Source: Ostrea edulis (lineage: Eukaryota). Taken from it: DNA of 64,000 nt. Of this stretch, positions 14,269 through 47,734 are shown in pieces (the stretch's first letter is position 1; the number at the start of each line of letters is the position of its first letter). The position numbers and the translations under genes are program-made. The notes under the pieces are model-generated. The model was not told where the DNA came from, ran no database searches, and was given only the letters and a program-made list of their open reading frames with translations. The stretch is taken from positions 102,114,001-102,178,000 of the forward strand of contig NC_079165.1 of assembly GCF_947568905.1 (NCBI RefSeq), read 5' to 3'.

Positions 14269-14352
14269 CTCAAAGGTTATCAGCAACATTAAAGTTTCAG
14301 ACAGAATTACAAAATGACAGACAGGACAAAAACAATACCCCCCCCCCCCCCC

Positions 14353-14384
<32 letters not shown>

Positions 14385-14385
14385 A
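13996..14385 (-). mobile_element. Non-autonomous Helitron/HINE-type repeat in the TLR 3' region
   Basis: Reverse-orientation copy of the element starting at 63806 (tttatgccccc..gatc...gacagacaggacaaaaacaata; catgtgaaatatcaaagctct repeats). It ends about 23 bp from the TIR stop codon. Confidence 0.75.
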
Positions 14386-14408
14386 ACCCTGCATAAAAGT
14401 GTTTATTC

Positions 14409-16532
14409 TTATGACTTGACGAATGTAACAAATCTTTCCCAAAAGAGTTCGCTTGCAGACGTGTCATTTGGCCACTCTAAGAAAGGCGTTGTTTTCAGTA
14501 GAACATGTAACGAGTTACACATGTTTCTGGTGTCAACATTCTCCAACATCACAACAAGAAGAGACCCCCTGTCGCCCTCCACTTGCCGAGTCTGTGCCAT
14601 CATCATCTCAAACTTGCACCAATGGCTCTGAACAAAGTTGTTAGTTAACAACAAGACCACCTTTCGACTTCCGTTGATCTTCTCGATGATATTGTCAATG
14701 ATTAATTTTCCAACTTCAAAATCTCGGTCATGGAGGCACAGTCGAAGATTTTCTTTCTTTTCTAAACATGGAATCAACTTCGATATGACCCAGACGTGGT
14801 CATTCGAGTGATATGCAATGAATACGTCTTAGAGGAAATCGTCCTCACCGGGTAACCGTTCATATCCCAGTTTCTTAGCACGTATTAGATATACGTAATA
14901 TTTGATGTGCCATCGATAGTGATACACCAAACTACCAACAATGACGATTATCACCAAAGCTACACACACACTCACAGCAGCAATTACATACGGATTCAGT
15001 GGATGACAGTACGAATACGACAAGCTGAACTTTGATAGGGTTTTCCCTGCCCATTCATGGGGCGATTTACACTTATAAGTATACGGCCATAACATGAGCA
15101 CCTTCGTATTATTCTTAATCCATTCCCGGAACCAAACTAAATCGCACGTACAAAGGTAGGGGTTGCTTCCCAATGACAGTTCCTTTATGCCTTTTAGAAA
15201 TACGGGAGGGAAAGAGGTCTTGTTGATTATCGCAATTTCGTTGTGATCAAGAAAGAGCGTTTTAATTGACGACACATTTTGAAAAACCCCACTCCTCCAT
15301 GTGCTCAGCAAGCAGTTTTTCAGATTCAACGAACACAAAAAGGGCATCCTTGAAAACAAGTTTTCTGGAAGCGTCAAAGCGGAAGTGCTTTGAAGAATCA
15401 ATTTGGTTAGATTGACCAAATGATGAAGAAGCTCGAAAAGCTTGACTCCATTGAAAGTGGTCAGTCGAATCTTTGTCATGTCCAATACATTTAATCCACG
15501 ACAGTATCGAAAAATGTTTTTATAATCTGACACAGGCTGTGGTGGTCCAGAATGTGCGTCTGGAAACATATTCATGTGGTTGGCGATGTAAAGAAGACGC
15601 AAAGAAGAGCTATTGAAACAGGTAGTTTCAAAGACGATATTGTTGGAGAGTAAATACTGGAAAGATAGGCGGACTAGAGATGGCAGATCTGAAAATGTGT
15701 TGTTTGGAATAACCCAGAAGTAGTTTCCATCCAACGTTAGATTTCGAAGTTTTGGAAGACAGTTACCTCGGAAGTTGTCTTTGTCTATATCAGTTATTTT
15801 GTTTTGGCCTAAATCAAGAACTCGTAATTTTGGAACAAGGGATATTCCCGCATTACAAAATGTTGGAATATGGGTTATTTTGTTAAAACGAAGTCGAATA
15901 ACTTTCAAGAGATGCGCACTTTTAAGGCTCGTATTTGTAATTCGATTGTTATTGAGACCAATGTATTTCAGTCTTGGTAAGCTTGAGAACACCCGACTAT
16001 CAAAACTTTGTAGATTATTACTATTTAGAGAGATTCCCTCCAGTGAAGACACATTCCCCATATGGCTAAACATATCCTTCGGAAGGTTCGGAAGGGCCAT
16101 CTCAATCAGATACAACTTCTTTAGTTTGCTGTGCCGCAGACCGTGAAAACTCTTCTTCAGGATTGATACAGGAATCTGATTTCCGCTAAGGTCCAAGAAT
16201 GTTAGCCCCGGAAAAACTTCAAAGGCATTACTGGAAATGTTCCCGATTTGATTTCCCCCAAGAATCAGCTCCTTGAGTCGGAGTTTTGTTATGTTATGTA
16301 GTGTGTCCTGGTCGACAGATGGAAGAAAATTTCCTGTGAATTTTAAAACTTCTGTTTTCTCTGGGAGTTGTGGGATGTACCGTAAACGCTTACCATGTTT
16401 CTCACAAGACGCTACTCTCGCCGTACAAGTACAGAAATGTTTCGGGCATGGCCATTTGGAATCACTTTCTTGAATATAAATCACAAACAATATAAAGATA
16501 ACTTGAGATGCCTGCGCCGCCATTGTAAACAT
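14409..16532 (-). pseudogene. Toll-like receptor (single cysteine cluster, intronless) with one in-frame premature stop before the TIR domain
   Basis: Order of parts: signal peptide, LRRNT (CPKHFCTC), multiple LxxLxLxxN LRRs, LRRCT (NPYLCTCDLVWF...YKCKSP), TM helix, then GEDDFL-TAA(14829-14831)-DVFIAYHSNDHVWV...LCLHDRDFEVG...SQWC-type box (QSHWCKFE)...FWERF*. The two ORFs are in the same frame, 17 codons apart. Could be a pseudogene, null allele, truncated receptor or sequence error. Confidence 0.92.
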
Positions 16533-16693
16533 GACAAAATATCACGGACATTAAGATTGAAGTTTCGGGAAGTTCCCTTTTATCAGAAGGAAATATATAC
16601 GTATCGCATCCCCAAAAGCACGATGTATCGATCGATGCGTTTTAGATTTGTATGTACATACTTCATACGTTATATGAATATGAAAACTCTCTT

Positions 16694-16706
<13 letters not shown>

Positions 16707-16739
<33 letters not shown>
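16707..16739. repeat. (TG)n microsatellite
   Basis: TG run following a short TA run, upstream of the TLR start. Confidence 0.9.
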
Positions 16740-16740
<1 letters not shown>

Positions 16741-16969
16741 CACAGGCTGTGGTTGTCCAGAAAGTGCGTCTGGAAACATCATATTCATGTGGCTGACGGT
16801 GTAAAGATTGGAAGACATTGGCACACAGACATTTAATAAAATGGACCGGTCAAAGTGGTTAGTCGTAGAGTGTTAATGTTGTCGTGGACTCTGTTCGTAA
16901 TATACCTTGGTCGCCCTAGATGTAAAATATCTTCCTTCAAACGTACTGTATTTTAACTATCGTGTGAGC

Positions 16970-25577: not shown

Positions 25578-28500
25578 ATGGCTGCCTCCAGTTACACATG
25601 TGTGTTGTCAACCCGAAGACCGTTTTTATCTGTTTTGAGATCCTATTCCAGATGCAGTACCACATTTTTTGACAAGAAGCATAAGCCAAAACCACAAGGT
25701 TTGTAAAATTTATTAGTATAAAATTTATTAGTATGATAAATGTGCAGATGTTGTGTAATCTTACATGGCTAGGCCAAAAAAAAAAAAAAAAAAAAAAAAC
25801 CCCAAAAACAAATCCTGTTCAACAGTTTACTCATCAATGCAATTTCACCCAGTTACTAGTACTTTGAACTAGAGTCTGAGTTCAAGGAAAGAATTGTGAT
25901 AAAAAGATTAATTTGGGTAAAGTTAATTTAATAAGATGTGTCATATAACACAGTTCTAATAATGATGGTAAGGGTCTATACTATACTACCCCTTATATTA
26001 ATATATATGGTGTGACCGTTGGACCGAGCGAAGCATGAAATGGTCATTGGCGTGTCCCAAGTGATGATCATAATTCTGTTAAGAACGGTAACATTTTATC
26101 AAGGTAATATGATTCATTTTAAGAATATATTACAGTATTTATGAAATTCCCCTTGCGCTAAACGCCCAGTGACATCTAAATGTTAAAGAGGGATATATGA
26201 GGATAATTACAGGATCCACCTATTCCTTTACTGCGGGGAATATAACGCCAGCTGACGTAAACCATGCATTGTGACGTCACATGTAGCCTCGGCTTCTTCG
26301 TCTTTCAAATCAAACAATTACAAACAACAACAATACATCCCGTTTGCAATATTAAAAAAATAGCTAAAACTAAACAAAAATTACCCAACAAATTCAATGT
26401 GGTAAAAAAAGGCCCCGCATTAATATATCATATATTTTTATTCAAGGAGACTCATGAACTCGTTCATCTATTTAGTCGTATTACTTTTTTTCTATTTGAT
26501 GATTGCTAAAAACTGTAACAACAATAATTATACCATTCATTGTTAACAAACTGAGTGTTTGAATTACAAATTGCATGTCTGTCTTGTATTTTTGCCATTC
26601 AAGACGTCGAATAACTGTAGAAGCAACTAATGAACAAAACAATATGGCGGCACCCATATGGATCACAACATTTTCAGTGAACGTATGTAGAGATTATCTC
26701 TATTCCTTTGCTGATTTTCTCACTTTTTCCTATACATACGTGTTACCTTTAGAGCCTTGCTTCGCGGACGGGCCTTTGGCCCGTCCGAGCTTTGCTCGGT
26801 ATTAATTGTGTAATTGAATGTACAGTACTAATTTCTAAACGATGGTTTGGCAAATATTGTGATGTTCAGGAAGTACACTGTCCATTTATGGAACTTAATC
26901 CATTTCTATCCCCCTTTGACCTGGCAGATCTGCCACTTTGCCTTACATCTTACTGAATCATTACTTTTATTTGGATCCTGTGTCATTATTTGCCTTACTT
27001 TTCGTCATATTCTGTGTCATTATTTGTCTTACTTTTAGTTGGATTCTGTGTGATTATTTGCCTTACTTTTAGTTGGATCCTGTGTGAGTTTTTGTCTTAC
27101 TTTTAGTTGGATTCTGTGTGAGTTTTTGCCTTATTTTTTGTTGGATTCTGTGTGATTATTTGTCTTACGTTTTGTTGGATTCTGTGTCATTATTTGCCGT
27201 ACTTTTAGTTGGATCCTGTGTGAGTTTTTGTCTTACTTTTAGTTGGATCCTGTGTGAGTTTTTGTCTTACTTTTAGTTGGATCCTGTGTGAGTTTTTGTC
27301 TTACTTTTAGTTGGATCCTGTGTGAGTTTTTGCCTTATTTTTTGTTGGATTCTGTGTGATTATTTGTCTTACTTTTCGTTGGATTCTGTGTCATTATTTG
27401 CCTTACTTTTCGTTGGATTCTGTGTCATTATTTGCCTTACTTTTCGTTGGATTCTGTGTCATTATTTGTCTTACTTTTCGTTGGATTCTGTGTCATTATT
27501 TGCCTTATTTTTCGTTGGATCTTTTGTTTGTATGTTGTTTTACGTCCCATTTGAGAATTTCTCATTAATAAACAGACATCGCTCTCTATAAGTGAAGTGC
27601 CACAAATTTTCCCCTATGGTTGGCACTTGAGGCTGTATCAGTAAACCTAAGGTTTGTTTATCATGTCACATGGGAGATCAGTTTTAGGGTTATATCTGAA
27701 AGATCCTTGACTTTCACTTCTAATGCCAAGTGCTTGTTTGAAAGAATAGTCACTACCTATGGAAAAAGTGTTAGGTTTGATGTGGCACCAGGATTGAGAA
27801 TTGGACCAGTTCCGATGTGAACACCATATTGTCTTAACCACCAGACTCCCCACAGGTGGAATCCAGTGTAACTTTGTCTTACTTTTGATTGGATCCCATC
27901 ATTTTCATGTAACTTTGCCTTTTGATTGGATCCCATGTAAATGCAATGGATCTTGTATAACTTTGCTTTGTTTTTGTCAGCATCCAATAAAGATGACCTT
28001 ACTTTAAAGTTCTCATTAGCTCTGAATGACTTCAAAGATTATTGAATTAAAGGGACAAGCTCTTATATATATATTTAGGATTGGTGCCTGTTTACCATGC
28101 CCAAAGAACAGTATCCTGGCATCGGTCGTTCAGCACCAGTCCATATTTCAGGAGTTCAGACACAGAACAGACTGTCACTGCTGAACCAGTAGAAGAGGAT
28201 TATCATACCATCATAAAAAACACAGAACGCAGCAAAGGTCAGTATCATCATAAAAAACACAGAATGCAGCAAAGGTCAGCACCATAAAAAAAACACAGAA
28301 CACAGCAAAGGTCAGTACCGTAATAAAAAACAGAGAATACTCCAAAGGTCAGTACCATCATAAAAAACGCAGAACACTCCAAAGGTCAGTACCATCATAA
28401 AAAAACACAGAACGCAGCAAAGGTCAGCACCATAAAAAAAAACCCAGAACACAGCAAAGCTCCGTACCATCATAAAAAACACAGAACGCAGCAAAGGTCA

Positions 28501-31500
28501 GCACCATCATAAAAAAACAGAGAACACTCCAAAGGTCAGTACCATCATGAAAAACACAGAACACTCCAAAGGTCAGTACCGTCATAAAAAACACAGACCA
28601 CTCCAAAGGTCAGTACCGTCATAAAAACATAGAACACAGCAAAGCTCCGTACCATCATAAAAAACACAGAACGCAGCAAAGGTCAGCACCATCATAAAAA
28701 AACAGAGAACACTCCAAAGGTCAGTACCGTCATAAAAAACACAGAACACTCCAAAGGTCAGCACCATCATAAAAAAACAGAGAACACTCCAAAGGTCAGT
28801 ACCATCATGAAAAACACAGAACACTCCAAAGGTCAGTACCGTCATAAAAAACACAGACCACTCTAAAGGTCAGTACCATCATAAAAAAACACAGAATGCA
28901 GCAAAGGTCAGCACCATAAAAAAAACACAGAATACAGCAAAGGTCAGTACCGTAATAAAAAACAGAGAATACTCCAAAGGTCAGTACCATCATAAAAAAC
29001 ACAGAACACTCCAAAGGTCAGTACCATCATAAAAAAACACAGAACGCAGCAAAGGTCAGCACCATAAAAAAAACCCCAGAACACAGCAAAGCTCTGTACC
29101 ATCATAAAAAACACAGAACGCAGCAAAGGTCAGCACCATCATAAAAAAACACAGAACACTCCAAAGGTCAGTACCATCATGAAAAACACAGAACACTCCA
29201 AAGGTCAGTACCGTCATAAAAAACACAGACCACTCCAAAGGTCAGTACCGTCATAAAAACATAGAACACAGCAAAGGTCAGCACCATCATAGAAAACACA
29301 GAATTGAGAACACACCAAAGATTATAGGAATCAAATTTGAATTCCTTTGCTTTTCCTGGATTGCCTTGTGTGTATACTTTTACTTCATGTTTACATTGTT
29401 TTAATCAGGTCCATTGGATCATCATGAGTTTCAAGCCGAGACAAGAACACTATTGGATATTGTTGCAAGGTCACTTTATTCAGAAAAAGAGGTATGCCAT
29501 GCCCCCCTCCCCCGAATTTTTTTTCTGTTATGATCGGAACAATTGGCCTTCATGAGAATACTATCCTTTTATGGAAAAGTTAAATTAGATGTGATGGTGT
29601 TTCAGGTGTTTATTCGAGAGCTGATCTCTAATGCTAGTGATGCTCTGGAGAAATTACGATACCTGCAGATGACTGACTCAGAGGTTAAGGATCCGGACAT
29701 ACCTCTAGAGATTCATATCGGTGTGGATGAAAACAAAAAGACATTCACAATACAGGTATATAGATAAGACACAGAATTTAGGTGTTTATTCGAGAGCTGA
29801 TCTCTAATGCTAGTGATGCTCTGGAGAAATTACGATACCTGCAGATGACTGACTCAGAGGTTAAGGATCCGGACATACCTCTAGAGATTCATATCGGTGT
29901 GGATGAAAACAAAAAGACATTCACAATACAGGTATATAGATAAGACACAGAATTACTCAATTTATTCCTTGATGTGGGCATAAATACATGTCCATGAAGG
30001 ACCTGCAGGTTTTTTTCCTACCACATGCGAATGGTAACTATATTACTTGAAATCAAAGGCCATCTGTCATAAATAACTTTCCTAAGGTGGCCTCTTCAAA
30101 GAGGTTTGACGTGTAGTGTTTGAAATATAACCAGTTGTGGTTGTGCCCTGTGATTGGTATGAGTACCATTTAGGACAGCTGGTAGCTTATATTAAGAGAA
30201 TCACAGTCTAGTTTGTCGGGTATACATGTATGAGATGCCCAATTAATATTTCATCACCTCACATACCGAAAAATTATAGAAAGTGATTCCTTATATTCAT
30301 ATTTGAAATAAAAATGAAAATTTAAAATTGACATTTCAAAAATACTGCCTAATAGAAACTGAAATGCACATGGTATTCCATGTTAATTTCCATAGTCCCC
30401 ACCCACTGATCCTTCATTTTGCATGAACTGAGAAATTTACATCCTGTTGTAAGTTGTGGGGAAATCAATACATTGAAGCTTCATGAAGGTTTATTACAGA
30501 GAATGCAGTTAGAAATCAAAATGATACTTATAAAATAGTCAAATAACAAAAATATCCAACCTCAAAAAATAGGTGTTATGTGGTATATGGAGGTGCTCAT
30601 AATGTTTAATAATTTTGTAGGATACTGGGATAGGTATGTCCAAAGAAGAAATGATTGAAAACCTCGGAACAATTGCAAAGTCAGGATCTAAGGTATAAAA
30701 AATTTGTGTTCCTAAAATTACTTATTTTGGAATATATTCTGAATCAAATGTAAAGGTATATTTGATTACTAAAGACTGTACGGAAAGTGTATATTTTATT
30801 TTTGGCATATTATAGAATTCATAGTGGGTATGTTCATTTTAATAGGAATTCTTAGAATCAATATCCAAAAAGACGGGAGATGTGGGCAGCAGCATCATTG
30901 GTCAATTTGGAGTGGGATTTTATTCCTCTTTCATGGTAGCAGAAAAAGTTGAAGTATTTTCGCAATCCAACAAACCAGGGTCTCAGGCCTTTTCCTGGAC
31001 ATCAGACGGGTAAATATGTCGATGTAAATCTTGATTGATTGGGGGATTCAACATTCATCACAAACAAATTGTTGTGTACAGCTTTGAATCATAATATTCA
31101 TTTGTTGTATCATCTGACAAAGTAATTGTGTGAAACATCCAGATTGGCATTTGCATCTTCTTCCTTGATCCAATCAGTACTATTCAAAAGACTTGTTTTT
31201 TACAGCACTGGAAGTTATGACATGGCAGAAGCTGAGGGGGTGCAGAGGGGAACAAAAATTGTCCTGCATTTAAAGGGAGACAGCTACAACTTTGCCAAGG
31301 AGGAACGTATCAAAGGTTGGTATCAGACAGAAAGAGATTTATCAAACATTGGTATCAGATGAAAAGGATTTCAACTTGGACGAATGTTTAAAAGATTGGA
31401 GAAAAAGATGTAGACATAATTGTTGTTCACGTTAATTATCCATCTTCTGGATCACCCTTGCGTTTTGTTTACTGCTGCCAGAAATGATGCCATTATCATC

Positions 31501-34500
31501 TACTTGCAATATTAAAATTTCAGAGGTTATTAAGAAATACAGCAACTTCGTTGGGGTTCCTATTTACCTGAATGGAAAACGAGCGAACATTGTACAGGTG
31601 AGTGATTACCTGTTTATTAATTGGGAACAGAATGAAACTTCAACTCATCCTATTGCACATTCATACAAGAGAGCCATTGATGTCAATTATTGATGTGTAG
31701 AAAACAAAGCCTTTTCAAAACTTCTATGCATTTGAACTATTGCTATTGCAGCCCTTGTGGATGATGGAAGCGAAAGACATTACGGATGACATGCATGAGG
31801 AGTTTTACCGCTTCATTGGAAATGTATACGACAAACCTCGTTACATACTTCAGTACAAAATTGATGCTCCACTTAACATACGAGCTTTGTTCTATGTACC
31901 AGAGTACAAGCCCAGTAAGTCAGTCTGAGATGTTTAGTTTAGTATGTACAGATCTCCCCTGTCTTCTTCAATGATCAGATTTCCAGTTCTGATGTCAAGA
32001 GAGTAAATCAGTGCCATATTGGATACACTTGCTCAGTTTTGAACTATGGTTTTTTTTCCTGGTAAATTTTGAGCTTTAATGTAAATAAAATTTTTAATTT
32101 TTGATATTGAATTTAAATTTGATGCATGTTTTAAAGTTATTTTTGATTTCTTTCAGCCATGTTTGACATGAGTCGAGAGACAGATGTTAGTGTTAACTTG
32201 TACAGTAGAAAAGTGATGATTATGCCAAGGGCCAATCATATCCTGCCAAGGTGGCTCCGGTTCATGAAAGGTTAGTCAACCTGCATTTCTTATTGTCATA
32301 ACTTAAAAAGTATATATGCCAAAGGAGTCCTTTTATTTTGATTCAAGCAAATTATTTGATCACACCAGATGTCAATACATGATACAACTTCTTGTCAAAC
32401 ATATTTTCTTGGACCCAACTTAACATAAAGTGTACTATTACTTTACAATCTTCCACTTTCAAATTACTTTGTAGTTAAGCAAATGTCAATTTTCAGCATT
32501 GTTTAACAAAAAGATTTGGATTTGAGATATCAATAATAAGATTAATGGTAGACATGTGCTGCAGAGTTGTCTTTCTTTATCTCCGTAATGTCCTGTGTTG
32601 TACAGGTGTTGTTGACAGTGAGGATATCCCGCTGAACTTAAGCAGGGAACTCCTACAAGACAGTGCTCTCATCAGGTAAAGTCGTAGTCAGAAAATATAG
32701 TCTCTCATATAGAGAGCACTCTCATCAGGTAAAGTTGTAGTCAGAAAATATAGTCTCTCACATAGAGAGCGCTCTCATCAGGTAAAGTTGTAGTCAGAAA
32801 ATATAGTCTCTCACATAGAGAGCGCTCTCATCAGGTAAAGTTGTAGTCAGAAAATGTAGTCTCTCACATAGAGAGCGCTCTCATCAGGTAAAGTTGTAGT
32901 CAGAAAATATAGTCTCTCACATAGAGAGCGCTCTCATCAGGTAAAGTTGTAGTCAGAAAATATAGTCTCTCATATAGCGAGCACTCTCTTCAGGTAAAGT
33001 CGTAGTCAGAAAATGTAGTCTCTCATAATTCAAGTTTTCCAGACCCCATCAATAGCAGTAATTGTTATAAATGTAACTAAAAAAAAGAGTATTGTGGCTT
33101 CATGATCCACATGCTTCATAGCACATTTGGTGGATGACTGAATGATGACAAGAAACAATCCCTCATCAGGGGGCATAGATTCACTGAATTTTCTTGTCTG
33201 TACATGTATCTCCATCAAGTTTTTAAATAAATGTTGGAGAAGGGAGAATAAAAAAAATGAACATCCTTTTGGCTTTATCTTGATGCAAACTCGATTCAGT
33301 GTGTTTACTGCTTATATATTGAAGCATGGTATAATTTTGATTGATATATGCCTTTCTGAAAATGAATCTATTTGAATCCCTTTTGAACATGGTCATTTTG
33401 TTTGAACAGGAAGTTGAATGATGTACTGTCCAGTAAGATGATTAAATTTTTCATGGACCAAAGTAAGAAGGACCCACAGAACTACATGAAATTCTATGAG
33501 GATTATGGACTGTTCTTTAGAGAAGGCATTGTAACAACACATGACCAGGATCAAAGGGTGAGATTGAAGTAGTGATGTCAGTAACATACCAAGGCTTATT
33601 TGTTCAATCTGATGTCAAAAACATATAAAACTTTTCATTGATGTTGGAAATTAAATAATTTGTTTAAAAAAACATACATGTATGATACTGTGGTTTTATA
33701 AATATTAGTCGGCATCAATTTTCTTGAATTTAGTCATTTGCACAGTTTCAAGGGTCTTACTATAAAAGTGGTTAATATTTACGCTGGGGGTTAAGTACGT
33801 GTTTTTCCACATCCAACCTTACACGTGGAGAAAAAATACATGATAACGTAATATAGTATATATTATATCAAATATTTATAAGTATGATGTATATATGTGT
33901 GGGTGAAATTTACGCGCTTATTACATGACCGCGTAATTAGTGTGAATTTCCCCCACGCATAACCACTTATACAGTATACATTTGTGGAATTGAATTCTTT
34001 AGTATACACTGTACATTTGTAGAATTGAATTCTTTAGTATACACTGTACATTTGTAGAATTGAATTCTTTAGTATACATTTGTAGAATTGAATTCTTTAG
34101 TATACACTGTACATTTGTAGAATTGAATTCTTTAGTATACATTTGTAGAATTGAATTCTTTAGTATACATTTCGATGAAACCGCAGTATAAGCATGTGAA
34201 AATGTGTAATTGCATTGGATAAATTTAATGTGTGGTCCAAACAGTTGAGATTTTGTAGAATGATTGTAACTTTGTGTGGAGATATTGTGGTGATGATTAT
34301 ACCGAGGTGTGTAGATATTGTAGTGATGATTGTGCTGAGGTGTGGAGATTTTGTAGTGATGATTATACTGAGGTGTGGAGATATTGTAGTGATGTTTGTG
34401 CTGAAGTGTGGAGATATTGTAGTGATGATTATACTGAGGTGTGGAGATATTGTAGTGATGTTTGTGCTGAGGTGTGGAGATATTGTGGTGATGATTATAC

Positions 34501-37500
34501 TGAGGTGTGGAGATATTGTAGTGATGATTGTGCTGAGGTGTGTAGATATTGTAATGATGATTATACTGAGGTGTGTAGATATTGTAGTGATGATTATACT
34601 GAGGTGTGGAGATATTGTAATGATGATTATACTGAGGTGTGTAGATATTGTAGTGATGATTGTGCTGAGGTGTGGAGATATTGTAGTGATGATTGTGCTG
34701 AGGTGTGGAGATTTGTAGTGATGATTATACTGAGGTGTGTAGATATTGTAGTGATGATTATACTGAGGTGTGTAGATATTGTAATGATGATTATACTGAG
34801 GTGTGTAGATATTGTAGTGATGATTGTGCTGAGGTGTGTAGATATTGTAATGATGATTATACTGAGGTGTGGAGATATTGTAGTGATAATTGTGCTGAGG
34901 TGTGGAGATATTGTAGTGATGATTGTGCTGAGGTGTGTAGATATTGTAGTGATGATTATACTGAGGTGTGGAGATATTGTAATGATGATTATACTGAGGT
35001 GTGTAGATATTGTAGTGATGATTATACTGAGGTGTGTAGATATTGTAATGATGATTATACTGAGGTGTGGAGATATTGTAGTGATGATTGTGCTGAGGTG
35101 TGGAGATTTGTAGTGATGATTATACTGAGGTGTGGAGATATTGTAGTGATGATTATACTGAGGTGTGTAGATATTGTAGTGATGATTATACTGAGGTGTG
35201 GAGATATTGTAGTGATGATTGTGCTGAGGTGTGGAGATTTGTAGTGATGATTATACTGAGGTGTGGAGATATTGTAGTGATGATTATACTGAGGTGTGTA
35301 GATATTGTAATGATGATTATACTGAGGTGTGTAGATATTGTAGTGATGATTGTGCTGAGGTGTGTAGATATTGTAATGATGATTATACTGAGGTGTGGAG
35401 ATATTATAGTGATGATTGTGCTGAGGTGTGGAGATATTGTAGTGATGATTGTAACTTTGTGGGGAGATATTGTAGTGATGATTGTGCTGAGGTGTGGAGA
35501 TATTGTAGTGATGAGTGTGCTGAGGTGTGGAGATATTGTAGTGATGATTATACTGAGGTGTGGAGATATTGTAGTGATGATTGTACTGAGGTGTGGAGAT
35601 GTGGTAGTGATGATTGTGCTGAGGTGTGGAGATGTGGTAGTGATGATTGTGCTGAGGTGTGGAGATGTGGTAGTGATGATTATACTGAGGTGTGTAGATA
35701 TTGTAGTGATGATTGTGCTGAGGTGTGGAGATGTGGTAGTGATGATTGTGCTGAGGTGTGGAGATGTGGTAGTGATGATTATACTGAGGTGTGTAGATAT
35801 TGTAGTGATGATTATACTGAGGTGTGGAGATATTGTAATGATGATTATACTGAGGTGTGGAGATATTGTAGTGATGATTATACTGAGGTGTGTAGATATT
35901 GTAGTGATGTTTGTGCGGAGATGTCGTCTTATATTGTGAATGTGTTTTGTAGGAGAGGATTGCGAAGCTGCTGAGGTTTGAATCTTCTAAGACAGCCCCC
36001 GGGGAGTTAATTGGTCTGGATGATTACGTGGACAGGATGAAGGCTGGGGCACGAGACGTCTTCTACCTGTCTGCTCCGAAGTAAGTAAAAGCAGAAATTG
36101 AAACGTTCATGTGACTGTAGAGGGTTATGGGACCATGGTTTTCAATTTCCAATTGTGATGTGTTCAGAGCTTTACAAATAAAATAGTGCCATAAGCAGAC
36201 TACTTCACTGAATTAAAGTTTTAATGAAATTACAGAATCACATACAGACACTGTTCACTTGGAACAAAATTTCTCAAGAGGTTTCACTTTCCATCTTGAA
36301 AAGTTATTTATCATAAACAGGTTGATGTTTTTAAACCATGTATCGGTTCAGGAGAGTATGATTGATTTCATGGAGCTACTTCAGTGTGGAAATGTGTTTT
36401 CATTCCTTTTAGATCTCAAGCTAGGGAGCATTAGACTGAAATTAATAACACAGACTGCCAAATAGATCAAATTTAATGATTCCTAACAGTTCTTTTAGTT
36501 TTCTGTATGACACTTCATGCTTTTAACTAGTCGACAGTTGGCAGAGAGATCTCCATACTTGGAAGCTTTACAGAAAGAGGACAAAGAAGTGTTGTTTTTG
36601 TACGAGCCGTATGATGAACTCGTTCTCATGAACCTGGGCCAGTTTTACAAGAAAAATCTCAAATCTATTGAGAATGAGATCACCAGTACGAACACAGATG
36701 AAGAAATTGATGCAGCAGACTCAGGCAGTCTGTCTAGGTCTGAAGCCAATGATCTAATGGACTGGTTATCAAACACTCTCCTAAACAAAGTCAGCAAGGT
36801 TAAGGTAGGGAGTCTTAAAATGCAGGGTCACTGATAGAAATCTCTTAAGTTTTTGTAAAAACAGTAGTTATTTAGGGACGAGATCAAAAGTTCAATTTCA
36901 GAGAAAAATCTAAATTCACATAGTTTTCACCAAGACCCCCCCCCCCCCCCCCTTTAAAACTGAATATGATGAATTTTGATTTTAATCTAACATTGATCTT
37001 TTGATTTGCCCTTTAATGAAAAATGGAGGTGATGAAAAGATAAAAAATTGATTTTGTCCTGTTTTACTTAAATGTGTCTTCTCCTCAGTACTTGTTTGTC
37101 ACAACAAATATTAGAATGTATTTGCTCTAGAGTATTTCTGGCATGATCATGAATTAGAAATAAACAGCTGTGTTTTTCCATTCAGGTAACAAAAAGGTTA
37201 TCCTCCCATCCGTGTGTGATAACTGTAGCGGAGATGGCATCAGCCAGGCATTTCCTGAGGACCACGCTGGCTGGCAAGAGTCAAGAGGAGAGGTACAGAC
37301 TACTGCAACCCACACTGGAAATCAATCCCAGGTAATGGACAGAAGACCGGGCAAAGGGCCGAAAAAACCATCTCCTTAGGTGTCTTTGGATAACGTTTTG
37401 ATACATTCTTATATTGTAAAGAAATCAACATTATTTAAAAAAAAAACCCCAGTCATTTTGAAAGTTCATTTATTCGGCAGTGTGCCACCTTTTGAGATCC

Positions 37501-45600: not shown

Positions 45601-47734
45601 AAACATCATCAATGTAACCTCACAGAATCAACATTTGGATGGTAGACCTATGGAAATGAGATTTTCTACCATCTTGGGCATTGTATGCCAAAAACATTTT
45701 GTTGACATATATAGATTTTATCCATATCATGTACGCTGCATAAAATACCAGAAGATTCAATCTAATCATGTCAAGAATTCCCTCTAGTGTTTGTTTTGAA
45801 AAAGTTTGTTCTCCTGATCCCTTAGCTACTGGTAATATAGTGGTATATTTATGTGTGGTGGTCAGCTGGGTTCGATTGTTGGTGGCCAGATAGTTCAGTT
45901 GGTAGAGCATCTGATTAGAGATTCAGGGGGCCTGGGTTCATTCCTGGTCTGGTCTGTTGCATTTTCTCCCTTCCTAGTATTACATCTGGTGCCATAGATC
46001 AGCCCCTGGAACTGACAGGTGAAAATGCCTGCCAGGGGATAAAGATCTACATGGTTTGATGTCTTCAAGTGTGAAGACATTTAAGGAGGGAGGAATGTAG
46101 CAGTCAGCTGGGTTTGATCACTGTTGGCTAGAGCACCTGACTAGAGATTCAGGGGGCCCAGATTTGAATCTCAGTCTGCTCCATTGCATTTTCTCCCTTC
46201 CTGTTAAATGTGTAAGTGTATAAGACTATTTTCAATTTTGAAAAAAAGACCATGTATTTTGTATTTTTTTGCTTTTCTGCAAACTCTGCTCTTTACTGTG
46301 TTATGTTTTATTTCAATTTCTTTTTAAAAACTTAAAGTTTGAGTCTTCCTTTATTCAATTACATATTAGGGTAAGTTCAAGGTTCGAGACGATTAGGTCT
46401 CTAAGTAGGGGTGAATCAATATATCGATATATCAAGGCGATTAGGTCTCTAAGTAGGGGTGAATCAATATATCGATACATAGAAATGTACCGGTATACAC
46501 CTGTCCAACGATATACGATACGGTGTTTCGACGATACGATATAATGTCGGGTTTAAAAATAGCCCTTTTAATAGTTGGGATCGAAGTTCATAATTTAAAA
46601 ATGGCTTTTAACAGGAACACGATTCCTGACTTTAATAACCGCTTTTACATTGTGACATTGGAGATTCCTCAGACTTTAATACCCGCTTTTACATTGTGAC
46701 ATCAGAGATTCCTCAGACTTTAATACCCGCTATTACATTGTGACATTGGAGATTCCTCAGACTTTAATACCCGCTATTACATTGTGACACATCGGAGATT
46801 CCTCAGACTTTAAAACCCGCTTTTACATTGTGACATCAGAGATTTCTCAAGACTTTAATCCTCGCTTTTACATTGTGACATCAGATATTCCTCAGACTTT
46901 AATACCCGCTTTTACATTGTGACATCAAAGATTTCTCAGACTTTAATCCCCGCTTTTACAGTGTGACATTGGAGTTTCCTCAGACTTTAATTGTCATTGT
47001 TTGTTTTGTTTGAAATAAAAGATATTAAAAACCACTTCATTTTAAATTTTGATATTTTGCTTCAGAAAATGCTTAACTACATTGTATATCCAATATATCG
47101 GATATCACATCTGACAGAAAATATTGTATCGTATCGTATCAGAAAATCTTGAGCAATACACACCCCTATCTCTAAGACAAGCAGACGAATGCTTTGGGGC
47201 ATTTTGGTTGATTTGTACACATACAAATTTTTATAAACATATCACATCAACAAAGATCTGTCCACATTTCCAAACATTTTTTTTAATATGCATGAAATTA
47301 TAACAGTAACATCATACCATAGAGTTCTGTTAACATCACATGATCACACCAAATGTAAACTGCAGGTACACCTAACTAACGCATCACTGAAAATGTCCCA
47401 GCAATTCTGTACACTGGGAGATATACTGTAGATGGAAAAGTCATCAATACACGCTAGACTAATCTGTTATACAATAGTGTTGACAAGCTCATACTTCAAC
47501 TCCCTGTATTAGTTATCAGACAGGTCATTTACATCAGTCCATCTGATACGTGCATTTTGTGAGATAGCAATTATCAGATATGTTCTTGAATAAAAATAGT
47601 AGCTATTTCATGTAAATTAAAGCATATGTCCTGGGTGTTAAGATACGATTATGAAATGCTTTTTTAGCTCACCTGAACCAAAGGTTCAAGTGAGCTTTTC
47701 TGATCACATTTTGTCCGTCGTCCGCCTGTCTTAT

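What the first reader, a model, noticed from the sequence alone, without database searches (positions are those of the whole stretch)
14778..14840. Single nonsense codon uncouples an otherwise intact TLR from its TIR domain
Seen: the 708-codon frame is broken only by TAA at 14829-14831, where TIR box 1 normally has Tyr (F/L-Y-D-x-F-x-x-Y). It is a one-base change from TAC/TAT. Both the ectodomain-TM part and the TIR part are otherwise free of stops and frameshifts. The gene is intronless, so exon-junction NMD would not be expected. Inference: a very recent null allele, a membrane-anchored signalling-dead decoy receptor, or readthrough. The BB loop also has RDFEVG instead of RDFxPG.
Basis: partly seen in the sequence, partly recalled or inferred. 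Interest (0 to 1): 0.7.

Follow-up and report, generated by a model that had tools for sequence, protein, structure and literature searches.

The report
Oyster immune-receptor gene being lost
An oyster Toll-like receptor gene really does carry a stop codon just before its signalling domain, but it is one of at least two natural knock-out variants at a gene this species seems to be losing, which is an ordinary fate for immune receptors.

Summary
On the minus strand, one frame runs from ATG 16532 to the stop at 14411-14409. It encodes an LRR ectodomain, one transmembrane helix and a TIR domain, and is broken only by TAA at 14831-14829 (codon 568).

Nine relatives have Tyr (8) or Phe (1) at that position. 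It is not an assembly error. Contigs from two other runs of the same species (two studies) carry TAA, and most others carry TAT.

In the same species, 13 of 14 contigs I fetched carry a 46-base frameshifting deletion in the ectodomain (window 15923-15968). By cluster counts the deletion is in 23 contigs against 1 intact. An Arg that is invariant in relatives (codon 579) has two missense alleles.

A 97%-identical sister taxon has TAT and no deletion. dN/dS against it is about 0.25, so the decay is recent and lineage-specific. The valine in the BB loop is ancestral to this clade of bivalve TLRs.

Nothing supports a selected decoy receptor or readthrough. Expression could not be tested. This is a new example of a known kind, comparable to human TLR5 392STOP and penguin TLR15. 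Interest is low to moderate.

The parts
14832..16532 (-). Codons 1-567: a signal-peptide-like start, LRRNT (CPKHFCTCT), LRR ectodomain with 11 N-x-S/T sites, a cysteine cluster next to the membrane, the TM helix and a 30-residue cytosolic stub.
   Evidence: ORF list, translation, Pfam LRR_8 E 9e-36, closest relatives are bivalve TLRs of 699-738 aa, motif positions.
14829..14831 (-). Codon 568 is TAA in the window and TAT (Tyr) in most other contigs of the species and in the sister taxon.
   Evidence: Relatives have Y or F here.
14412..14828 (-). Codons 569-707: TIR domain, free of stops and frameshifts.
   Evidence: Pfam TIR E 7.9e-17. Solved TIR domains of TLR6, TLR1 and TLR2 match at E 1e-27 to 1e-26.
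15923..15968 (-). These 46 bases are present in the window but deleted in 13 of 14 other contigs of the species. The deletion starts at codon 189, has AAA microhomology at both ends, shifts the frame and brings a stop after five altered codons.
   Evidence: The 190-aa products are P0121, P0124 and P0126.
14796..14798 (-). Codon 579 is CAC (His) in the window, CGC (Arg) or TGC (Cys) in other contigs. It is Arg in all nine relatives compared.
14922..14987 (-). Transmembrane helix, codons 516-537.
   Evidence: A run of 22 hydrophobic residues read directly. No predictor was run.
14709..14726 (-). BB loop RDFEVG, codons 603-608. It has Val where vertebrate TLR1, TLR2 and TLR6 have Pro.
   Evidence: The nine relatives have V or A. 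TLR6 and TLR1 have NFVPG.
14409..14411 (-). Natural stop codon of the full-length frame.
14402..14407 (-). AATAAA, one base after the natural stop. It is a likely polyadenylation signal.
   Evidence: Read directly. Its function is inferred.

Best explanation
The window holds one natural knock-out allele (Tyr568 to stop, TAT to TAA) of an intronless Toll-like receptor gene with a single cysteine cluster, in an ostreid oyster.

The allele is real and segregates in the species. The gene as a whole appears to be in the course of being lost or has become dispensable. A second, independent and much commoner knock-out (a 46-base frameshift deletion in the ectodomain) and two missense alleles at an otherwise invariant Arg occur in the same population samples. 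A fully intact haplotype is rare.

Shown:
- the variants themselves;
- their presence in several individuals and studies;
- intact orthologues in other oysters, and no break seen in the sister taxon over the part read;
- purifying selection over most of the divergence from the sister taxon.

Inferred:
- If the TAA allele is transcribed and translated, it gives a membrane-anchored LRR protein with a 30-residue tail and no TIR domain, which cannot recruit adaptors.
- Carriers suffer little, because bivalves have many TLR paralogues.
For: - **TAA is in the reads.** Contigs built from the reads of runs X1 and X2 match the window over 14360-16690 in one piece with no differences and no joints.
- **TAA in other individuals.** It is also in L002 (ERR13868516) and L003 (SRR25445064), which are contigs of other runs with other haplotypes.
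- **The Tyr allele.** TAT is in the 11 other contigs that cover the site (a further contig, L014, stops short of it), and an uninterrupted 704-aa product exists (P0129, L004).
- **The deletion.** The 46-base deletion is in 13 of 14 contigs. By cluster counts, 23 contigs carry the deletion-type N-terminal piece and 1 carries the intact product.
- **Other studies.** Word shares of 0.86-0.88 in nine more runs from four studies match what deletion haplotypes give (0.83-0.89).
- **Codon 579.** Arg is invariant in nine relatives. Here the alleles are His, Arg and Cys.
- **Sister taxon.** Its contig (97% identical) has TAT and no deletion. The 40 listed differences split into 19 nonsynonymous and 21 synonymous over about 1153 and 320 sites, giving dN/dS of about 0.25.
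- **Other oysters.** Full-length orthologues of 705-708 aa exist.
Against: - **No RNA data.** Neither expression nor the fate of the TAA transcript is known.
- **Contig limits.** Logan contigs collapse the two haplotypes of a diploid and can be mosaics. Phase, the apparent four-gamete pattern and allele frequencies are therefore only rough.
- **Biased sample.** The contigs were retrieved through protein clusters, so the sample is not random.
- **Relatedness.** The two resequencing studies may include related or hatchery animals.
- **Weak polymorphism signal.** Within-species SNPs (11 nonsynonymous, 8 synonymous) are too few to show relaxed constraint on their own.
- **No raw-read check.** The only raw-read run tried (X21) laid no reads.
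Confidence: 0.8

Rival explanations
1. Assembly or sequencing error: the true codon in the reference animal is TAT or TAC.
For: TAT is the commoner allele in the species.
Against: Contigs of X1 and X2 are identical to the window across the site at word depth 21 and 29, with no alternative contig. TAA recurs in L002 and L003 from other runs and studies, on different haplotypes.
Confidence: 0.02
2. A selected decoy: the TAA allele is kept because the TIR-less, membrane-anchored ectodomain dampens signalling, by binding ligand or pairing with full-length TLRs.
For: The stop falls exactly between the juxtamembrane stub and the TIR domain, leaving an intact ectodomain and TM helix on the reference haplotype. 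The allele occurs in several individuals. A human TLR5 stop allele acts dominantly (PMC2194120).
Against: All orthologues are full length, with Y or F at the site. In L002 and L003, TAA lies downstream of the frameshift deletion, where it cannot matter. Most other haplotypes are knocked out much earlier, so there would be little full-length partner to dampen at this locus. The TIR part after the stop shows no sign of long separate decay or of selection.
Confidence: 0.07
3. Stop-codon readthrough or recoding restores a full-length receptor from the TAA allele.
For: The downstream frame is open for 139 codons.
Against: An open frame is expected for any young nonsense allele. The stop is not conserved in any relative. 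By general knowledge, TAA is the least leaky stop, and the context CTC-TAA-GAC is not a known readthrough motif.
Confidence: 0.02
4. The deletion-bearing contigs are a separate paralogous pseudogene copy, not alleles, so the window gene carries only the single lesion the reader saw.
For: Logan contigs are short (about 2.3 kb) and end in simple repeats, so their wider genomic position was not seen.
Against: They match the window at over 99% through both flanks, up to the same microsatellite and poly-G tract. X1 and X2 show no contig with the deletion joint, so the copy is not a fixed second locus. SNPs are shared between deleted and undeleted contigs.
Confidence: 0.07

Closest known systems
Human TLR5 392STOP (Hawn et al. 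2003, PMC2194120)
   Same: A common single-base nonsense polymorphism in a TLR gene that abolishes signalling and segregates in healthy carriers.
   Different: The human stop lies in the ligand-binding domain and was shown to act dominantly. Here the stop lies after the TM helix, just before the TIR domain. Its effect is untested, and a second knock-out allele is much commoner.
Penguin (Eudyptes) TLR15 pseudogenisation (Fiddaman et al. 2021, PMC8788240)
   Same: Several independent disruptions of one TLR gene, with a full-length form surviving only as a rare haplotype in the population.
   Different: In penguins even the full-length form was shown to be non-functional, a case of cryptic earlier loss. 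Whether the intact oyster haplotype (L004) works is unknown.
Naturally TIR-less TLR relatives and soluble TLR forms (RP105/CD180 and others; from general knowledge, not tested here)
   Same: The predicted product of the TAA allele has the same layout: LRR ectodomain, TM helix and a short tail without a TIR domain.
   Different: Those are conserved genes or regulated isoforms. This is one allele of a gene whose orthologues all keep the TIR domain.
Bivalve single-cysteine-cluster TLRs annotated 'TLR2' or 'TLR13' (for example Saccostrea echinata P0001, 708 aa)
   Same: 72% identity over the ectodomain, the same length and domain order, the same box 1 and the same BB loop without Pro.
   Different: The window copy is interrupted at codon 568. 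The names TLR2 and TLR13 come from automatic annotation and do not imply orthology with vertebrate genes.

Membership tests
Toll-like receptor (type I LRR-TM-TIR receptor) | Leucine-rich-repeat ectodomain | tested here: met
   Pfam LRR_8 E 9e-36 in five stretches, and LRR_4 E 1.8e-17.
Toll-like receptor (type I LRR-TM-TIR receptor) | Single transmembrane helix between the LRR and TIR parts | tested here: met
   A 22-residue hydrophobic run at codons 516-537, followed by basic residues, read directly. No TM predictor was run.
Toll-like receptor (type I LRR-TM-TIR receptor) | Cytosolic TIR domain | tested here: met
   Pfam PF01582 E 7.9e-17. Solved TIR domains of TLR6, TLR1 and TLR2 match at E 1e-27 to 1e-26.
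Toll-like receptor (type I LRR-TM-TIR receptor) | All parts in one uninterrupted reading frame | tested here: not met
   The window allele has TAA at codon 568. The feature is met by another allele of the same species (P0129, L004, 704 aa from the second ATG).
Segregating loss-of-function allele (polymorphic pseudogene) | Disabled and intact forms both present in one species | tested here: met
   TAA is in the window, L002 and L003. TAT is in 11 contigs. One haplotype is fully intact (L004).
Segregating loss-of-function allele (polymorphic pseudogene) | Variant seen in independent individuals and data sets | tested here: met
   Runs ERR13868516 and SRR25445064 come from two accession series, in addition to the reference-like X1 and X2.
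Segregating loss-of-function allele (polymorphic pseudogene) | Loss of receptor function shown by assay | not testable with these tools
   This needs a reporter assay or a knock-out phenotype.
Decoy or dominant-negative TIR-less TLR | Truncated form conserved or otherwise kept by selection | tested here: not met
   Nine relatives are full length, with Y or F at the site. TAA also lies on contigs that are frameshifted upstream.
Decoy or dominant-negative TIR-less TLR | Truncated protein is expressed | not tested
   No RNA run was offered for this species.
Programmed stop-codon readthrough | In-frame stop conserved among orthologues, with a constrained downstream frame | tested here: not met
   No relative has a stop at this site.

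The most novel reading that the evidence does not exclude
The repeated, independent hits on this one TLR are not neutral decay. The hits are the 46-base deletion at high frequency, TAA at about one contig in seven, and two changes at an invariant Arg. On this reading they reflect selection for loss or attenuation of the receptor in this oyster lineage, for instance because a parasite or virus exploits it. Alternatively, the TAA form acts as a TIR-less dominant-negative kept by balancing selection.
Probability: 0.1. Interest if true: 0.6.

Novelty: new member of a known kind. Interest (0 to 1): 0.3.

Why it matters
For annotation, this locus should be treated as a polymorphic pseudogene and not as a sequencing error to be "fixed". 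The reference haplotype is also not representative, because most animals sampled carry a different knock-out.

For oyster immunogenetics, it offers natural knock-outs of a defined TLR. These come in three states (early frameshift, TIR-less, intact) and could be genotyped cheaply. They could then be tested against survival in disease outbreaks.

As biology it is unsurprising. Expanded invertebrate TLR families are known to turn over quickly, and segregating TLR null alleles are documented in humans and birds.

Tried and rejected
- **Raw reads.** The only raw-read run offered (X21, an oyster metagenome) laid no reads on the stretch, so there are no read-level allele counts.
- **RNA.** No holder is on record as RNA. 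X19, guessed to be RNA, is a 97%-identical taxon whose contig ends in CCGG plus an Illumina adapter. It is probably a restriction-based DNA library and says nothing on expression.
- **Exact look-up.** A search for the 564-aa product (undeleted plus TAA) found no gene on record. That haplotype is therefore documented only by the window and by X1 and X2.
- **Papers.** Searches for oyster or bivalve TLR stop codons, pseudogenes and resequencing found nothing on this locus.
- **Splicing idea, rejected.** I first wondered whether the contigs of about 2.3 kb were transcripts and the 46-base gap a spliced "exitron". The contigs begin in the upstream microsatellite and end at the poly-G tract, as DNA assemblies do. 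The gap has no GT..AG ends (it starts AAATAC and ends CCTTA).
- **BB loop, rejected.** The BB-loop valine is not a sign of decay, because it is ancestral.
- **Not run.** I did not use the large representative search or structure prediction, because family assignment was never in doubt.

Full report
**What is there.** The feature lies on the minus strand. An ORF of 567 codons runs from ATG 16532 to TAA at 14831-14829. The same frame then continues for 139 codons to the stop at 14411-14409.

The first piece is a leucine-rich-repeat ectodomain (Pfam LRR_8, E 9e-36). It starts with a signal-peptide-like stretch and an LRRNT cysteine motif, has 11 N-glycosylation sequons, a cysteine cluster next to the membrane and a 22-residue transmembrane helix (14922-14987). 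A 30-residue basic stub follows.

The second piece is a TIR domain (PF01582, E 7.9e-17). Its closest solved structures are the TIR domains of human TLR6, TLR1 and TLR2 (E 1e-27 to 1e-26). An AATAAA sits one base after the natural stop.

The nearest named proteins are bivalve TLRs of about 700 residues. The best is a Saccostrea echinata protein at 72% identity over the ectodomain, so the genome is that of an ostreid oyster. Notes by other agents of this scan call it a flat oyster; I did not verify the species.

The stop aligns with Tyr in eight relatives and Phe in one of nine, directly before box 1 of the TIR domain. It differs by one base from the TAT found in other copies of the same species.

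**It is not an error.**
- Contigs built from the reads of two runs (X1 and X2, from two studies, both possibly from the sequenced animal or close kin) cover 14360-16690 in a single piece. They have no differences and no alternative contig or joint.
- The protein search found a cluster of 99%-identical products from other runs.
- I fetched 14 of those contigs and aligned them to the window. TAA recurs in L002 (ERR13868516) and L003 (SRR25445064), on haplotypes that differ from the window. TAT is found in the 11 other contigs that cover the site.

- Thirteen of the 14 contigs lack 46 bases that the window has (15923-15968). The deletion begins at codon 189, has AAA at both edges, shifts the frame and ends translation five altered codons later.
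- In the cluster, the deletion-type N-terminal product is on 23 contigs and the uninterrupted 704-residue product on one (L004, SRR25445068).
- The sampling is biased, because contigs were reached through proteins. However, the word shares of nine further runs from four studies (0.86-0.88) match what deletion haplotypes give (0.83-0.89) and not what the intact one gives (0.93).
- Codon 579 is Arg in all nine relatives. It is His in the window and L003, Cys in seven contigs and Arg in the rest. Both changes are CpG transitions.

**Age and phase of TAA.** TAA occurs with His579 (window, L003) and with Arg579 (L002). It also occurs with the deletion (L002, L003) and without it (window). Taken at face value, the allele is old enough to have recombined or picked up a second change. 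Logan contigs of diploid animals can be mosaics of the two haplotypes, so the phase is not certain.

**Timing of the decay.** A contig from a second taxon (organism B, 97% identical over 14360-16419) has TAT, no 46-base deletion and only an in-frame 3-base insertion within the coding part. Forty of its substitutions against the window were listed: 19 change the protein (one of them the stop itself) and 21 do not. Over about 1153 nonsynonymous and 320 synonymous sites, that gives dN/dS near 0.25.

The gene was therefore under purifying selection for most of the time since the two taxa split. Other oysters keep full-length orthologues of 705-708 residues. The disabling variants are recent and specific to this lineage. 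Within the species I counted 11 nonsynonymous and 8 synonymous SNPs. That ratio is higher, but the numbers are too small to carry weight.

**Most likely mechanism.** This TLR is dispensable in this oyster, or has become so, and is being lost through several independent lesions that still segregate.

If the allele is transcribed, the message would end translation 420 bases before the normal stop. Its product would be a glycosylated, membrane-anchored LRR protein with a 30-residue tail and no TIR domain, so it could not recruit TIR adaptors. All of this is inference, because no RNA data were available.

**Rivals.**
- *Selected decoy receptor.* This would be the interesting alternative, but every orthologue keeps the TIR domain. 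TAA also lies on contigs already frameshifted at codon 189. Most other haplotypes make no full-length partner at this locus.
- *Readthrough.* It has nothing in its favour beyond the open downstream frame, which any young nonsense allele has.
- *Separate paralogous copy.* The deleted contigs could in principle come from another locus. They share both flanks with the window up to the same simple repeats and share its SNPs, and the deleted form is absent from X1 and X2.

**The BB loop.** RDFEVG (14709-14726) is not a defect of this copy. All nine relatives have Val or Ala there, while human TLR6 and TLR1 have Pro.

**Comparison with what is known.** Segregating TLR knock-outs are well documented.
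- The human TLR5 392STOP allele is common and acts dominantly (PMC2194120).
- Crested penguins carry several independent disruptions of TLR15, with a rare full-length haplotype that proved non-functional in vitro (PMC8788240).

The oyster locus follows the second pattern closely. Whether its rare intact haplotype still works is the open question. I did not test it.

**Verdict.** The "null allele" reading is supported but needs widening: the locus is a polymorphic pseudogene with at least two knock-out alleles. The decoy and readthrough readings are unsupported. This is a new example of a known kind, of modest interest, and useful mainly as a set of natural TLR knock-outs for oyster disease genetics.

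Noticed in passing
window 14338-14437: A poly-G tract and a high-copy repeat lie directly 3' of the gene. Summed contig depth is about 1000-1900 here, against 21-29 over the gene, in runs X1 and X2. Many short contigs branch off at 14388-14391.
   Followed up: no
window 16662-16750: There is a (CA)n(TA)n microsatellite upstream of the gene whose CA/TA boundary varies among contigs. A 7-base indel (16662-16668) and a 1-base insertion near 16598 also segregate in the 5' flank.
   Followed up: partly
window 34274-35909: A 33-base satellite of about 50 copies at 91% matches. It explains the extreme G skew of 34-36 kb and the stack of overlapping ORFs there.
   Followed up: partly
window 26961-29303 and 32658-33025: Three more minisatellites: a 34-base unit in 16.5 copies, a 37-base unit in about 30 copies with higher-order periods of 112 and 260, and a 53-base unit in 7 copies.
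   Followed up: no
window 29604-29954: An exact tandem duplication of a 176-base unit (2.0 copies, 100% matches). This is the stretch another first-stage note reads as a duplicated TRAP1 exon.
   Followed up: partly
window 45884-45955: A tRNA-like sequence. Rfam tRNA scores 39.5 bits, but ARAGORN cannot name the anticodon (a four-base loop call). It may be a tRNA pseudogene or a tRNA-derived repeat.
   Followed up: no
run X19 contig, laid on window 14360-16419: The contig of the 97%-identical taxon ends in CCGG followed by Illumina adapter sequence. The run guessed to be RNA is therefore probably a restriction-digest DNA library.
   Followed up: no
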